Assembly (NCBI GenBank): GCA_001179505.1
Contig: CDMY01000309.1
Location: forward strand, 62,001 to 126,000
Origin: Vitrella brassicaformis CCMP3155
Taxonomy: Eukaryota; Protista; Chromerida
Length of the DNA: 64,000 bases
Direction of reading: 5' to 3'
In this document: piece after piece, positions 13,834 through 19,470 of the stretch
Layout: every line of letters begins with the position of its first letter
Numbering within the stretch: the first letter of the stretch is position 1
The notes under the pieces: model-generated
Seen by the model: only the letters and a program-made list of their open reading frames with translations
Told to the model about the DNA's origin: nothing
Databases searched by the model: none
Translations under genes and position numbers: made by a program

Positions 13834-15430
13834 CTACATATCGATCTGCTGTCTGCGCATGACGTCTCTGTGCCCCCCACTCACAACCGCCTTCCTCAGC
13901 CCCGCATTCGGCAAGACATCCGGCAGCCGGCCGAACTTCATGTAGAACACCTTTGGCCCTTCTTCCTGCATGGCCTCCTCCTCGTCGATGTCGCACTCGA
14001 TGCGCGCCTGCAGCCGCTTGGCCACTTCCTCGACAGACGGCAGTGCGAGATCCCTCTTGGCGCCATCCACTCGCTCCATCTCGTGCGCTCGGACCACCTT
14101 GAGCGAGTCGAAGATAGAGGGCGGCGGGCCAGCGGCAAAGCCGTCATGGTAGGAGCCGTAGTAGCGCATGAACTGGTGCTGGTGCAAGAGAATGCGCGAC
14201 GAGTCGTTGGGGAGGGGCGGGGCGGCGATAAGCTGCGGCAGATAGAAACCCTTCTCCTTGCTGTCAGTGGTGGTGCCGTCTCTGTTGGCGGCTGCCTCGT
14301 CTTCTTGTTCCTTCAATCTCTTCTGTTTGGCGGCCTCCTTGGCCTTGAGCTCCTCCTCAGTGTAGTCCCACATGGTGACCCTCCTTAGCCTCGCCAGCTC
14401 AGCCGCCTCCTCGTCAGTCAGATTCAGCTCCTGCAGTCGATCCCCATCGGCGATCCGCTCGTCGGCCTCACGCACCTTCTCGTCAGCCGACCGGTCCGTC
14501 TCGTGGATGGCAATGCGGCGGTCTCGGTACCTGAAGGTGTTGGCGTTGAAGAACTGCTTTGTGTCGCGGCCCTTGATGGGCAGCCCGTAGGAGGGGTCCA
14601 GCTGGGTGGCGTAGTGGGGGTAGGGGAGGCAGCTGTAGAACAGGGGGGGCGACTGCCGCCGGATGGTCGACAGGACGTCGTAGGTGAGGAACTCGCTGTC
14701 CGTCACGATGTGCAGCTCGGCGTTGTCCATCATGGTGGCCGCCAGCGACTTGAGGAACTTGGTGCGGATCAGGCGAGACTGCAGGGTGCGCAGCGGGTGG
14801 CGCGTCCGCTCCGTCTCCTTGTCGGTGGAGGGGTAGTTGACGTACGCAGCCCTCACGAGCTTCTCGGGGATCAGCCTGTGCAGGCAGAAGGCATCTGCAC
14901 AGAGGATCCGCACATTGGGGAACCGCACAAGGGCGTCGGGGTGCACCTGGAACGCCCTGACCAGACCGATGGAGCGACCGAACACACACATGTGTGCACG
15001 CCAATATCCCGCTGGCTGCGTGTGTCTACCTGCAGCATTTGTGCAGTGCATTGAAGACTCTCCTGTAGTCGTTGTCGATGGCAATCCAGTTCTGGTCGGG
15101 GTTGTGCAGGGCGTGGTGCAGCGCGAACTCGGCGTCCCCACACCCGATGTCCAGATAGCACTCCTCGCCCTCGCGGAAATACCACTGCTCAAGTGCCGGA
15201 GCCATCCCAGATCTGAACCAAACACACACAGAGCCACATTTGCCAGTGCAGTGCAATGCAGAACATCCCACCATCCATCAGTGTGCGTACCCGTCTCTTC
15301 CAAACAGGAGCCCAGGAGGGTCCCACAGGTAGAACTGGGTCATCTCTGCCCGGTGCAGGTACCACTGCCTCAGCTGTTGGTTGAAGAGCCGCTGCAGGGC
15401 GGTGAACGCATTGGCCGAGTGAACACTCAT
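13834..15430 (-). CDS. TrmB/Trm8-like SAM-dependent methyltransferase (tRNA m7G46 family) with a long C-terminal extension
   Basis: YLDIGCGDAEFALHHALHNPDQNWIAID (motif I), NVRILCAD and LHIVTD. ATG at 15430 (MSVHSANAF); three short introns; stop at 13834. Confidence 0.75.
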
Positions 15431-15651
15431 CGCAGCTGCACAAGACGGATTCGGCAGATCAACAGCAAAAGGACATAGAGCAGGCAATGGAGAAGACGGG
15501 AAGCTCAACAGAGAACGACGGAGGGATGTGAAGAGGACGCACCTTTTCGGCAGCAGCGATTTCAGGGAGCACCCTAGGCGGCCTTTTAGAAGGCGCAAGT
15601 GGGGTCTGCCGAGCGGGAGTATTTGGCACTCGTTATCAGTATCAGTACCGA

Positions 15652-16404
15652 ATGGCGATGCCAGATGCAGTCGATGAGTTTTGGCCGTCAGAGCCGGAGC
15701 ACGGCGCACCGGCTGCCGACCAGCCTCACGTCGCCATCGAGGGAGAGGAGGTGTCGGGCGACGGCAAGACCATCCCGCTGGACCGGCTGTACTTCCTCCT
15801 GGCTGCCGCTGCCACCATCCTCGTCGCTGCCGCTGTGCTATCGCTGTGGTAAGAAGCAACACTCCGCTGCTGCTGCTGATGCTGATGCTGATGCTCACTC
15901 TCTTACTGCACTGCTCTGCCCTTATATGTGTTTTCAGGTATCGGTTCAAGCAGTCCCGTCAGAGGAAGCGGGACGAACAGCTGGACCGGAAGAGGGAACA
16001 AGCACGGTACAACAGATGAAGAGCATCCATCCATCCATGCAGCCCTCATTCGTGTGTGACGTCATGTTCTCCCCTGCTGCAGGCTTCGCCAGTTGGCTCG
16101 TCTGGAGGAGGAGGCCGACCACTTCAAACACACGGTGGAATACGAGGTAGGTGGGTGACCCAGGCAGCCAGCAGCCCGCCTCTAGGGTCTATCTACCGTG
16201 CATCTTCCCTTTTCTCTCTTTCAGCGCATGGAGCAGGAGGCCAAGGAGCGTGACAAGGGCATCACGGCTGAGCACCGGCACACGATGGACAAGGCGGAAC
16301 ACTACGGCCCTGGCCTGGACAGCCCCTTCTTCGACAAGTCTATGCCAGGTTACCGGCCGCAGCGCAAGGGACCTGGCATGAGGGGTGGTGGATGACGGCG
16401 GTAG
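15652..16404 (+). CDS. SELENOS: Selenoprotein S (SELENOS/VIMP)-like; TGA at 16393-16395 read as Sec, true stop TAG at 16402-16404
   Basis: Exons 15652-15848, 15938-16006, 16083-16146 and 16225-16404 are phase-consistent. They encode one N-terminal TM helix, a charged coiled coil and a Gly-rich tail ending YRPQRKGPGMRGGG(U)RR*. A SECIS lies downstream. Confidence 0.85.
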
Positions 16405-16605
16405 ACGCGGAGGCAGCCATGTGTCAGTCGCACACATGGGCCTTCGGCGACCGATGTCCGTGCATACGTACGGACATCCGTCCGCTCTGACTTGTGTTTT
16501 TCCGTGTACAATTCAACCAAGGGGCATCGGGGGAGATGTTGATATGTATCCGGGCAATTCAATTGCGGGGGAGTGTCATCGCAATATGCATGACCGCAAG
16601 TTGAT

Positions 16606-16701
16606 GAGTGAGTGCATGAGTGCTGTTCGAGTGACGGCTGGGGGGCAGAAGGCCCGTTGCGGTCCGCTCACAGCCCGAAGGAAACGGCGCTCTGCTCACT
16701 C
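16606..16701 (+). promoter_or_regulatory. SECIS element, type II, GUGA core
   Basis: Helix I gagtgctgtt/aacggcgctc extended by gagtgag/ctcactc; core GTGAC (16631-16635) opposite CGAA; helix II ggctgggggg c/gctcacagcc; unpaired AGAA; apical ministem ggcc/ggtc. Confidence 0.85.
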
Positions 16702-17210
16702 GCCAACTCGCTGCATGCGTGCATGGCTTGGCTGGCTGGCTGCATTTATGAGGGTGGCAGACGATGATAGCTGTCTGTCTGTCTGTGCAGATGTGTGGAG
16801 TGACGTACGCCTGTGAGCGCGGATTCATGAATCTATTGCTGTGTTCATTGTGTTCACGAAACGTCATCGGTCGAAGAAACGGATCACATCGAGGTATAGC
16901 TGACGCGTTTTGATGCTTTTCTCGTTCCCTGATCTGTACAAGTCCAGCAGGCAGGCAGTCACGAAACACTACACTAACGCATGATTGGGTCAGTCCACCC
17001 CGGCCAGCCAGCCATGAGAGCATCCCTCCGTCACGACAGCCCTCTGCCATCCCCTAGGCCTGCACAATCCTACACTCCACGCATCCTCCCTTGGCAAGAG
17101 TGGGGCGACCGACCTGACAGACAAGAATGGGACCCCACACACAGCATACATGCAGCACCGGTGGACAAGCCCATCGACGGAGGAGACACAAACCGTACCT
17201 GTCCTCCTTG

Positions 17211-19470
17211 TTAGGTGTCGAGTGCTTTGAGAGTGAGCGTATTCGGACGCCGCCCGGGAAGTCCCCCCCAACTGATGCGAAACCGGCCGTCAACGCCTTC
17301 AATGGCGTCGCCGTGGGTCCGCTCCTCCACCAGCCGCCTAAAGCTCTGACCTCCAACTGGCCGCAACAGCGAGAAGTGGAGCTCCTTGATGCCTCGGATC
17401 GTGAGCAGCGACCTGACGCAGGCGATGCCGAACTCGCCAGGGCATCGCCATCGCCCAAATCCCGAGGAACTGCAGACAGACAGACAGACATAACATCCAA
17501 TGGGTTGGCGAGCGAGAGCTGCCGATTGGTTGTCTGTGAGGAGGCGATTGTCTGCAGCTCACCCTCTACACTACTATCCAGTACTGTGATGGTCGGCAGC
17601 TGATCCGCCATGTCCCCCCACGTCAGCCCCCCCTCACCCACATCCGTCACGCTTGTGGCCTCGAAACACTCCAACTCCCTCTCCCCACCAACCGCCTGCA
17701 ACACCCCCACTGCTTGCTCCTCTGTCGAGTGCCACAGCTCAATGCGTTTGACAGCCGGCATCTTGGTCAGCAGCTTGCGAGCAATCACGTGCCCGTTGCT
17801 GTCGTGGATGGAGAGGGACGACGCGGCGGGGAATGCGTTGTTTGGCATGCTGTCGATCACAAGTGGGTCAGCATCCAGACCCACTTGTGATCGCATGACC
17901 TCCACCCTCTCCGCTTTGAGGAATGTCAGGGACTGAGCGAGGGCGATGGCAGCGGGGCTGGGCGTGTCCAGAGGGTTGGTGGTGTGGTTGGGGAGGATGG
18001 CTGGGGACACTGTGTGGGCTTTGGCTGCCAGCTGCTGGATGTGTTTCTGCACGAAGGGGGAGGGCTCCGGGCGCGTGGGGACCCCACACAGAAGGGAAAG
18101 GTCGAAGGCGTTACTCGTGTCGAAGATACTGATGTCGACGGGGATGTCGGGCCTCACAGAGACGGCACGGGCGAAGGTCTCGATGGCCGAGAGGGTCGCG
18201 AAGATGTGGCTGTCGATAAAGGAGTCCTTGAGCTTCATGCTGAGCTTCTTGATGGAGCGGCAGCCACGGTCGACAAGAACGGCCTGCACAAAGACACACG
18301 TACATCGCAAACAGACTCTCACCCACTCTCTCTGATTTTGTGTATCTTGTGTAATCCGTCGCACACCTGAAGGCGCTCTAGACCCCTAGCGCTCGCGCTC
18401 GACATTCTGAGTGTGCCGACATCCTCCAGCTGCGACAGCGACCCCGGCTGGCCGGCCGCTGCCACCGGGATCTGCGCCAGCGAGTTGGCCGTGACGTCAG
18501 GATGGCATTCCACGTGCAGCTCCTTGAGGCACCGCGACATCCCCACCAGCCCCTCCAACACCTCCAACACCCCATCGCCACACACGATCCCTCCCAACTG
18601 GACTGCCTCCAGTGACGGCAGCTGCCAGTGGCGCCCGCGGCCGGGATAGGAGAGCTCATATCCCTGCACCGTGATGGAAGTGAGGGATGTAAGGGTGGGG
18701 GGCGGGTCGAGGCGCGAGAGGAGAGCCACCGACGGCTCCGTCGCAGCTCGGATATCGCGATACTCGTCCTCGTCGACGATGACGGTCGATCCGCCGCTCT
18801 CGCCGTACTCGATCGACTCAAGCGTCCCCCGGCCTAGTTGGCCGGCTGCTGTGGCCGCCTCGGCTCTCCGCCCCTCACTGTGGCCCTCCACCGATGCCGT
18901 GACGACCTTGTGGATAACCGGCGACAGAGGGATGTAGTCAATAAAAGCGGGCGGCCCTCTTGAGATGAAGAGGTTACGGGGATGCTTGACGACGATTGAC
19001 TTGAGCCGTGTGAGCTGCCGGCCCCACTCGAAGGCGTCAGCGAATGAGAGGCCGCACCAGAAGCGCCGCTCGGCGGTGTCGTAGGTGTCCATGACCAGCT
19101 GGGTGATCTGGCAGCCGACGTGGCGCCACAGCCGCTGGGGCAGCGCCGCCACCAAATGAAGCGACACGAACGAGAAGACGTAGGCAACAACAACCGGCTG
19201 AGTGTTTCTCTGACAACACACACCACACAGACACAGAGAGAGGAGACAATGAGGATGTGTGTGTTTGCCAGTGGTTTGGTTTGGTGCATCTCAGCTTACG
19301 ATGTGGCTGAAGTGTTGAGCAAAGGCCTGCAGACCTATGCTGTGGGTGGCGTGCGATGCCGTCGCCTGCTGCTGGTGCTGCGGGCCGTCGGTGTCCATCA
19401 TGGCCTCCTCGTGTGCATCGTCCTCCTCTCGCTCTGCCCGCCTCTGTCGCTTCGACGCCGACTCACTCAT
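17211..19470 (-). pseudogene. Expanded lineage-specific family (F-box-like N-terminus plus LRR-like solenoid), copy 1, 1-nt deletion in last exon
   Basis: MSESASKRQR...FSHI|PVVVAYVFSFVSLHLVAALPQRLWRHVG... is homologous to 39613-43871 and 46076-48223. The coding strand reads gatgccctggcgag here against gatgccgctggcgag in the paralogues (about 17441). Ancestral stop at 17211. Confidence 0.75.

What the first reader, a model, noticed from the sequence alone, without database searches (positions are those of the whole stretch)
15652..16404. Hidden selenoprotein: SELENOS-like gene with UGA recoded as selenocysteine
Seen: the spliced frame ends GPGMRGGG-TGA-CGG-CGG-TAG, so the TGA lies three codons before a second stop. 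The protein has one N-terminal TM helix, a coiled coil and a Gly/Pro/Arg-rich tail. Known: SELENOS/SELENOK carry Sec at the C-terminal second or third last position after Gly residues (human SELENOS ends RPGRRGPSSGGUG) and act in ERAD/redox at the ER. Standard gene callers would stop the protein at the TGA, as the supplied ORF track does.
Basis: partly seen in the sequence, partly recalled or inferred. Interest (0 to 1): 0.78.

Follow-up and report, generated by a model that had tools for sequence, protein, structure and literature searches.

The report
SelS-like selenoprotein gene in Vitrella
A small membrane-protein gene of the alga Vitrella brassicaformis almost certainly reads its apparent stop codon UGA as selenocysteine, so the public protein model is three residues short; it is an ordinary new member of the widespread selenoprotein S/K type.

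Summary
Four GT-AG exons (15652-16392) give 166 codons ending GPGMRGGG, then TGA, CGG, CGG, TAG. The public model of this gene (P0001, Vitrella brassicaformis CCMP3155, named "Selenoprotein S" in UniRef) has the same splicing and stops at the TGA.

The second stop alone means little: 8.8% of all TGAs in the window have one within three codons. The 3' UTR carries the weight. A type II SECIS hairpin lies at 16601-16706, with core AGUGA at 16630-34, AA at 16649-50 and GA at 16677-78, 238 nt after the UGA. A covariance model built only from other SECIS elements of this genome makes it the single significant hit in the window on both strands (20.4 bits, E 0.003; next best 11.5 bits). It shares CGAGUGACGGCUG and CAGCCCGA exactly with three deiodinase SECIS elements.

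The genome has tRNA-Sec, SepSecS, SelD and Sec-containing GPx, SelT and deiodinase genes.

The protein has a disordered N-terminus, one helix spanning the membrane segment and a long charged stretch, and a Gly/Pro/basic tail with Sec third from the end. That meets the SelK/SelS family definition. It fails Pfam Selenoprotein_S, has no cysteine, and no sequence relatives were found.

Verdict: new member of a known kind. This scan has read the same stretch once before.

The parts
15652..15848 (+). Exon 1: start codon, acidic and disordered N-terminus, and the transmembrane segment (…LYFLLAAAATILVAAAVLSL).
   Evidence: It matches P0001.
15938..16006 (+). Exon 2: basic, charged helix that follows the membrane segment.
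   Evidence: The junction codon TG|G = W is as in P0001.
16083..16146 (+). Exon 3: continuation of the long charged helix (LRQLARLEEEADHFKHTVEYE).
   Evidence: The junction codon CG|G = R is as in P0001.
16225..16392 (+). Exon 4, coding part: end of the helix and the Gly/Pro/basic tail ending GYRPQRKGPGMRGGG.
   Evidence: (100% identity to P0001 residues 109-164).
16393..16395 (+). UGA, proposed selenocysteine codon, third codon from the end. It is followed by C.
   Evidence: The recoding is inferred from the SECIS and the Sec machinery.
16396..16404 (+). CGG CGG TAG: Arg-Arg and the true stop codon.
16409..16486 (+). Two strong hairpins (16409-16445 and 16446-16486) starting 14 nt after the UGA. 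They are a possible Sec-redefinition element, like SL1 of human SELENOS.
   Evidence: MFE -49.9 kcal/mol, z = -3.52. The SL1 parallel comes from PMC3628699. Function is inferred only.
16601..16706 (+). Type II SECIS element. Helix I is 16601-16627 paired with 16683-16706. The internal loop and core are CGA-GUGA-C (16628-16635) opposite C-GA-AGGA (16676-16682). Helix II is GGCUG..GGGC paired with GCUC.CAGCC. AGAA lies at 16647-16650. Helix III with its apical loop spans 16651-16665.
   Evidence: constrained fold -45.5 against MFE -47.7 kcal/mol; R2: 20.4 bits, E 0.0028, top hit of the window; core shared with deiodinase SECIS elements; z = -2.18.

Best explanation
This is a nuclear gene of Vitrella brassicaformis for a single-pass membrane selenoprotein of the SelK/SelS type, with the overall layout of selenoprotein S. 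That layout is a short disordered N-terminus, a transmembrane helix running into a long charged cytosolic helix, and a flexible Gly/Pro/basic tail. The UGA at 16393-95 is decoded as selenocysteine, directed by the type II SECIS hairpin at 16601-16706 in the 3' UTR. The mature protein therefore ends ...GGG-Sec-Arg-Arg (169 codons from the first ATG), not ...GGG. Shown here: the gene model, the UGA context, the SECIS-like element and its statistical distinctness, the Sec machinery, and other selenoprotein genes in the genome. Inferred: that Sec is actually inserted; that the protein sits in the ER membrane with its tail in the cytosol; and that the lone Sec on a flexible tail acts as a redox or nucleophilic centre in ER protein quality control, as in SELENOS/SELENOK. 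Because the protein has no cysteine, any chemistry must be intermolecular (SelK-like), not the Cys174-Sec188 selenylsulfide of human SELENOS. The two hairpins just after the UGA may slow the ribosome and favour recoding.
For: 1. Gene model and terminus.
2. Sec machinery: tRNA-Sec, SepSecS, SelD.
3. Bona fide Sec genes in the same genome, each with a SECIS downstream: GPx x2 (Rfam SECIS_1 gives 25.8 bits on one of them), SelT and deiodinase-like genes.
4. The candidate folds as helix I, internal loop, GUGA/GA core, helix II, AGAA, helix III.
5. Model R2 was built from three deiodinase and two GPx SECIS elements, without the candidate. It ranks the candidate first in 128 kb of searched sequence: 20.4 bits, E 0.0028, next best 11.5 bits. 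Scaled to the 1 kb downstream of the UGA on one strand, that is roughly 2e-5. At genome scale 18.9 bits corresponds to E about 7.
6. The 13-mer CGAGUGACGGCUG and the 8-mer CAGCCCGA are identical to those of the deiodinase SECIS elements, while the rest of the hairpin and the flanks differ. The pattern has 9 genome hits against 1 for the reversed control.
7. Protein features: TM segment, no Cys, tail composition; a single helix over residues 41-134.
8. Nearest ESM Atlas clusters are all Selenoprotein S (0.92, 206/256 shared features), and nothing usable remains when PF06936 clusters are excluded. UniRef names the record Selenoprotein S.
9. The SelK/SelS family definition is in PMC10650576. SelS is a selenoprotein in the alga Ostreococcus (PMC2375036). 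SelS SECIS elements are type II in all species surveyed (PMC2647825).
Against: 1. No direct evidence of Sec insertion or of an mRNA that includes the SECIS; a transcript look-up found nothing on record.
2. Rfam SECIS models do not report the element, even in a 191-nt search. However, Rfam also misses the SelT element and scores the GPx element below its gathering threshold.
3. The unconstrained MFE fold pairs part of the core differently and is 2.2 kcal/mol more stable.
4. The base 5' of the 3' GA is C, not the consensus K. Two deiodinase elements have the same C.
5. Pfam PF06936 and PF10961 do not match.
6. No homologue was found, so conservation of the UGA or a Cys replacement could not be examined.
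7. Model R2 E-values come from a shortened calibration and are rough.
Confidence: 0.8

Rival explanations
1. The TGA is an ordinary stop codon. The protein ends ...GGG as annotated, and the downstream hairpin only resembles a SECIS by chance.
For: A second in-frame stop within three codons follows 8.8% of TGAs. Rfam SECIS models are silent. The simple descriptor scan gives roughly one hit per 3-4 kb in control loci. There is no transcript or protein evidence.
Against: A model trained without the candidate places it alone at the top of 128 kb of searched sequence, 9 bits above the background. The core and lower helix II are identical to those of SECIS elements behind deiodinase genes with active-site TGA. 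It lies on the correct strand, 238 nt after a UGA, in the exact sequence context (Gly run, Sec third from the end) that defines SelK/SelS proteins.
Confidence: 0.1
2. It is a real selenoprotein but not an orthologue of SELENOS. It would be a lineage-specific or convergent member of the loose SelK/SelS class that arrived independently at a membrane anchor, long helix and Sec tail.
For: No Pfam Selenoprotein_S match at E<=10 and no PDB SelS match. No homologue at all by phmmer against 1.84 billion representatives with exon 4, or by word search with the whole protein. No cysteine, whereas human SELENOS uses Cys174-Sec188. SELENOK and SELENOS themselves share no significant sequence similarity (PMC10650576).
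Against: Language-model features place it with Selenoprotein S clusters only. The layout (N-terminus, TM, about 70-residue charged helix, tail) and a stem-loop next to the UGA match SELENOS rather than SELENOK. The tail motif YRPxR(K/R)GP...GG-U resembles my recollection of the vertebrate SELENOS terminus; this comes from memory and was not tested.
Confidence: 0.35
3. The SECIS is a decaying relic. An ancestor used Sec, but the present gene terminates at UGA and works, or is degraded, as the truncated form.
For: Human SELENOS also produces a truncated, Sec-less isoform (PMC3628699). Only three codons are at stake.
Against: All defining SECIS parts are intact and the core is identical to active-looking elements elsewhere in the genome. 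The protein has no other redox residue, so the truncated form would lack its only candidate active site.
Confidence: 0.05

Closest known systems
Selenoprotein S (SELENOS/VIMP; Pfam PF06936)
   Same: Size is about 170-190 aa. It has a single N-terminal TM helix running into a long charged cytosolic helix, then a disordered Gly/Pro/basic tail with Sec next to a Gly run near the C-terminus. It has a type II SECIS and a stem-loop close to the UGA. Premature termination leaves a Gly-Gly end. Language-model features point to this family.
   Different: No PF06936 match. Sec is third from the end (U-R-R) rather than penultimate (U-G). There is no cysteine at all, so no intramolecular selenylsulfide. 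A p97-binding VIM is not recognisable with confidence.
Selenoprotein K (SELENOK; Pfam PF10961)
   Same: Single TM helix, Gly/Pro/basic tail, Sec third from the C-terminus, and no resolving Cys.
   Different: SELENOK is about 94 aa and lacks the roughly 70-residue charged helix. There is no PF10961 match.
Algal and protist SelS selenoproteins (for example Ostreococcus; PMC2375036)
   Same: Sec-containing SelS in unicellular marine algae with large selenoproteomes.
   Different: No paper in the searchable library treats chromerid selenoproteins.
Eukaryotic type II SECIS (Rfam RF00031 and consensus of PMC2647825)
   Same: UGA/GA quartet, purine 5' of UGA preceded by an unpaired A, helix II, As in internal loop 2, helix III, long helix I.
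   Different: The core is GUGA rather than AUGA. The base before the 3' GA is C instead of G/U. Rfam scores it below its reporting level. In this genome GUGA is the commoner form: SelT and four deiodinase elements.

Membership tests
SelK/SelS-type membrane selenoproteins (definition in PMC10650576) | Single transmembrane domain in the N-terminal region. | tested here: met
   One hydrophobic stretch, P0001 residues 46-64, Kyte-Doolittle mean 2.36, inside the predicted helix 41-134.
SelK/SelS-type membrane selenoproteins (definition in PMC10650576) | C-terminal region rich in Gly, Pro and positively charged residues, and unstructured. | tested here: met
   The last 45 residues hold 14 G+P and 10 K/R/H. 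There is no secondary structure and pLDDT is about 56-61 after residue 134.
SelK/SelS-type membrane selenoproteins (definition in PMC10650576) | Sec at the second or third position from the C-terminus. | tested here: met
   The UGA is the third codon before TAG. That it is read as Sec is inferred.
Selenoprotein S (PF06936) | Match to the Pfam Selenoprotein_S profile above the gathering score. | tested here: not met
   No PF06936 hit at E<=10 for P0001 or for single exons. The six-frame genome scan did not hit this locus.
Selenoprotein S (PF06936) | Long cytosolic helix (coiled coil) directly after the TM segment. | tested here: met
   A continuous helix reaches residue 134; 58% of residues 64-120 are charged. 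Oligomeric coiled-coil formation was not tested.
Selenoprotein S (PF06936) | Cysteine upstream of Sec forming a selenylsulfide (human Cys174-Sec188). | tested here: not met
   P0001 contains no cysteine. The human feature is described in PMC3628699.
Selenoprotein S (PF06936) | VCP/p97-interacting motif (Arg-flanked, Ala-centred helix). | tested here: inconclusive
   Read by eye only. The segment KREQARLRQLARLEEE is Arg-rich with Ala but lacks the paired Ala. No motif tool was available (definition).
Selenoprotein K (PF10961) | Match to the SelK_SelG profile, and a protein of about 90-100 aa without a long helix. | tested here: not met
   No PF10961 hit. The protein has 166+3 codons and a roughly 90-residue helix.
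Eukaryotic SECIS element, type II | UGA...GA non-Watson-Crick quartet with a purine 5' of UGA. | tested here: met
   A-GUGA at 16630-34 and GA at 16677-78, facing each other across an internal loop.
Eukaryotic SECIS element, type II | Helix II of about 11-14 pairs/positions, then unpaired As, then helix III and an apical loop; helix I below. | tested here: met
   Helix II has 5+4 bp with a 2x1 internal loop. AGAA lies at 16647-50 and helix III at 16651-65. Helix I has about 20 bp. The spacing is like the GPx, SelT and deiodinase elements.
Eukaryotic SECIS element, type II | Recognised by an independent covariance model. | tested here: met
   Genome-specific model R2, built without the candidate: 20.4 bits, E 0.0028, rank 1 of the window. 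Rfam RF00031 gives no hit, but its sensitivity in this genome is poor.
Sec-decoding trait of the organism | tRNA-Sec, SepSecS and SelD/SPS present. | tested here: met
Sec-decoding trait of the organism | eEFSec, SBP2 and PSTK present. | not tested
No family-specific profiles were at hand that would separate these from EF-Tu, L7Ae and KTI12 relatives.

The most novel reading that the evidence does not exclude
The protein may be a natural intermediate between the two ER-membrane selenoproteins. It has the SELENOS body (membrane anchor plus long cytosolic helix, UGA-proximal stem-loop) but the SELENOK chemistry (a lone Sec third from the end, no cysteine anywhere). If it is homologous to both, it would support a common origin of SelK and SelS. 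It would also show that the SELENOS scaffold works without an intramolecular selenylsulfide, in the free-living sister lineage of apicomplexan parasites.
Probability: 0.2. Interest if true: 0.45.

Novelty: new member of a known kind. Interest (0 to 1): 0.3.

Why it matters
It corrects a public protein model that lacks its only likely catalytic residue, and adds one entry to the selenoproteome of a chromerid alga, the photosynthetic relatives of apicomplexans. No selenoprotein survey of chromerids turned up in the searchable literature. The set of SECIS elements collected here shows that Vitrella mostly uses a GUGA core with a strongly conserved lower helix II (CGAGUGACGGCUG...CAGCCCGA). Generic models such as Rfam SECIS_1 miss this form, which is useful to know for anyone annotating selenoproteins in alveolates. 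The absence of any cysteine makes the protein a simple natural test case for what a lone tail Sec does on a SELENOS-like scaffold.

Tried and rejected
- Rfam scan of 14000-19000 and of 16560-16750 found no SECIS hit. Rfam SECIS_1 over the genome found nothing, and its controls were also silent.
- Pfam on single exons found nothing.
- phmmer of exon 4 against 1.84 billion representatives returned only the gene's own record. The word search with P0001 returned only itself. The PDB sequence search gave only chance helical matches.
- My first SECIS guess used the AUGA at 16616 as the core, taken from an unconstrained fold. I dropped it because its AA lay about 29 nt from the core; the GUGA at 16631 gives canonical geometry.
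- Model R1, built from the two near-identical GPx elements, was too narrow. It found neither the SelT element nor the candidate.
- MAFFT alignments of diverse SECIS elements (A1, A3) were structurally out of register, so they were not used for models.
- The six-frame SelK (PF10961) and Sep15/SelM (PF08806) scans of the genome gave nothing usable.
- The Rdx hit on C104 is a CxxC (Cys) form, not a selenoprotein.
- The core-pattern hit on contig C189 appears to lie inside long open reading frames on its own strand. The hits on C227, C586 and C729 have no gene context checked. None of the four is counted as a SECIS.
- The genome-wide R2 search scored only 150 of about 20,650 first-look candidates and did not re-list the candidate, so it serves only to calibrate scores.
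- The look-up of encoding contigs found no record for P0001, so no transcript contig was available.
Whole-protein analyses used the database record P0001, which the exon-4 search returned. The joined and read-through steps were left out.

Full report
**What is there**

The window is eukaryotic DNA, about 58% G+C with short GT-AG introns. It belongs to a 72.7 Mb assembly of 1064 contigs.

Reading the sequence and translating each exon by reference gives a four-exon gene on the + strand:
- exon 1: 15652-15848
- exon 2: 15938-16006
- exon 3: 16083-16146
- exon 4: 16225-16392

That is 166 codons ending ...MPGYRPQRKGPGMRGGG. They are followed by TGA (16393-95), CGG, CGG and TAG (16402-04).

A phmmer search with exon 4 alone against 1.84 billion representative proteins returned a single record, P0001. 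Its 164 residues reproduce my splice junctions exactly, start at the second Met and stop at the TGA. The word search identifies P0001 as an unnamed product of Vitrella brassicaformis CCMP3155, which UniRef calls "Selenoprotein S".

Whole-protein work used P0001.

**Is the terminus more than chance?**

On its own it is not: 8.8% of all TGAs in the window are followed by another stop within three codons. The case rests on the Sec machinery and on the 3' UTR.

**Machinery and other selenoprotein genes**

The genome holds:
- a tRNA-Sec (Rfam 71.6 bits; ARAGORN tRNA-SeC, anticodon tca)
- SepSecS exons
- SelD exons

Genes with an in-frame TGA at the known Sec position are:
- two GPx genes, NVASK-U-GLT
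- SelT, CQS-U-QY
- three deiodinase-like genes

One Rdx-family gene is a Cys form. eEFSec, SBP2 and PSTK were not tested.

**The SECIS element**

A simple descriptor scan ([AG]UGA, about 9-14 nt, AA... GA, with helix II pairing) found exactly one site in the 1 kb after the UGA. Its parts are:
- core A-GUGA at 16630-34
- AA at 16649-50
- GA at 16677-78

With the core kept unpaired, the region 16601-16706 folds as follows:
- a roughly 20-bp helix I
- an internal loop, CGAGUGAC opposite CGAAGGA
- helix II, GGCUG / GGGC paired with GCUC / CAGCC
- unpaired AGAA
- a short helix III with its apical loop

This fold has -45.5 kcal/mol, against -47.7 kcal/mol for the unconstrained MFE. The 108-nt hairpin has z = -2.18.

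The same scan, and a fold-based scan, found one clear element downstream of each control gene:

| Gene | Core |
|---|---|
| GPx (two genes) | AUGA |
| SelT | GUGA |
| Deiodinase-like, contig C386 (two elements in tandem) | GUGA |
| Deiodinase-like, contig C638 | GUGA |
| Deiodinase-like, contig C768 | GUGA |
| Deiodinase-like, contig C255 | AUGA |

All are type II, with the As 13-16 nt after the core. The three C386/C638 deiodinase elements read CGAGUGACGGCUG ... CAGCC(C/U)GA. The candidate shares this 13-mer and CAGCCCGA exactly, whereas the upper helix II, helix III, helix I and the flanks differ. It is therefore not a recent copy of a deiodinase 3' UTR; the identity is confined to the functional core. 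The pattern RTGACGGCTG-N20-45-CAGCCNGA occurs 9 times in the genome, against once for the reversed control.

**A non-circular test**

Model R1, built from the two GPx elements only, was too narrow. Model R2 was built from three deiodinase and two GPx elements, without the candidate. I searched it over the whole window on both strands with filters off.
- Its best hit is 16621-16684 (+): 20.4 bits, E 0.0028.
- The next best hit scores 11.5 bits.
- On the other loci it also picks up the SelT element (14.7 bits) and an unexplored site on contig C376 (22.7 bits).
- At genome scale 18.9 bits corresponds to E about 7. So about three chance hits of the candidate's score are expected per genome, or roughly 2e-5 for the 1 kb behind this UGA. 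These E-values come from a shortened calibration and are rough.

Rfam's SECIS models do not report the candidate. They also miss the SelT element, and they give the clearest GPx element only 25.8 bits, below the gathering score of 35. That negative result therefore carries little weight.

The published consensus (PMC2647825) asks for:
- the UGA/GA quartet
- a purine 5' of UGA
- As in internal loop 2
- helix 3 in type II elements

All of these are present. The paper also notes that SelS SECIS elements are type II in every species surveyed.

**The protein**

P0001 has one hydrophobic segment (residues 46-64) and no cysteine. AlphaFold, run on the single sequence, gives one continuous helix over residues 41-134, confident to about residue 120, and unstructured ends. 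The tail is Gly/Pro/basic.

This meets the three criteria that define the SelK/SelS family (PMC10650576):
- a single N-terminal TM domain
- a G-rich, positively charged, disordered C-terminus
- Sec second or third from the end

By layout it is SELENOS-like rather than SELENOK-like, because of the long helix and a size of about 170 aa. ESM Atlas features give only Selenoprotein S clusters as neighbours (0.92), and nothing usable remains once those clusters are excluded.

Strict membership is not shown:
- Pfam PF06936 and PF10961 do not match.
- There is no PDB relative.
- There is no detectable homologue.
- There is no Cys equivalent to human Cys174.
- A p97-binding VIM cannot be called.

**Further parallels**

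Directly after the UGA, two strong hairpins form at 16409-16486 (z = -3.52). Human SELENOS has a conserved stem-loop at the start of its 3' UTR that promotes Sec insertion (PMC3628699). If translation stops at the UGA, the product ends in Gly-Gly; in animals this marks truncated SelK and SelS for degradation (PMC10767929). Both are analogies, not tests.

**Context**

The gene sits between two others:
- Upstream is a divergent Methyltransf_4 (TrmB-like) gene.
- Downstream is a convergent gene on the minus strand, whose coding sequence I read as ending near 17215.

The SECIS therefore lies in the first 300 nt of an intergenic stretch of about 810 nt. It can only serve this + strand gene.

**Known or new**

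Sec-containing SelS is documented in unicellular algae such as Ostreococcus (PMC2375036). From my own knowledge, not checked here, it is also reported in Toxoplasma and Neospora. No paper in the searchable library covers chromerid selenoproteins.

Earlier notes of this scan report other Vitrella selenoproteins and say the GUGA core is usual in this organism; my own collection of elements agrees. One note (s1-231220) is the same stretch read in another window.

**Verdict**

This is a correctly spotted, mis-annotated selenoprotein, a new member of a known kind. Its modest points of interest are the lack of any cysteine, the lack of detectable sequence relatives, and the genome-specific SECIS core.

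Noticed in passing
window:16409-16486: Two very stable hairpins (8-11 bp stems) start 14 nt after the UGA. MFE is -49.9 kcal/mol and z = -3.52. They sit where a Sec-redefinition element, like SL1 of human SELENOS, would be.
   Followed up: partly
L028:545-593(-) and L028:146-194(-) (G000:C386): A deiodinase-like gene with an in-frame TGA carries two near-identical GUGA-type SECIS hairpins in tandem, 399 nt apart.
   Followed up: partly
L033:1495-1560(-) (G000:C376:168785-168836): A SECIS-like element scores 22.7 bits with model R2 and matches the shared core pattern. The upstream gene was not identified, so this may be a further selenoprotein.
   Followed up: no
G000:C624:249586-249629(-) and 251445-251488(-): Two equally scoring (18.9 bits) R2 matches lie 1.86 kb apart on one contig. 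They could be duplicated SECIS-like elements or a repeat.
   Followed up: no
L018:1575-1624(+) and L019:1551-1600(+): Two GPx genes on different contigs (C488, C249) have the same NVASK-U-GLT exon and almost identical AUGA-type SECIS elements that differ only in the apical loop. They look like recent paralogues.
   Followed up: partly
L012:1501-1875(-) (G000:C104): An Rdx-family (SelW/SelT-like) gene has a CVGC motif, so it is a cysteine form rather than a selenoprotein. The TGAs reported in the match lie in introns.
   Followed up: partly
window:13834-15440(-): The divergent upstream neighbour is a Methyltransf_4 (TrmB-like) methyltransferase gene (PF02390, 26-27 bits on two exons). Its 5' end lies about 200 nt from the ATG of the selenoprotein gene.
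   Followed up: partly
window:17054-19221(-): The convergent downstream gene has long open frames with no Pfam match. Its coding sequence ends near 17215, so the two genes share an intergenic stretch of about 810 nt at their 3' ends.
   Followed up: no
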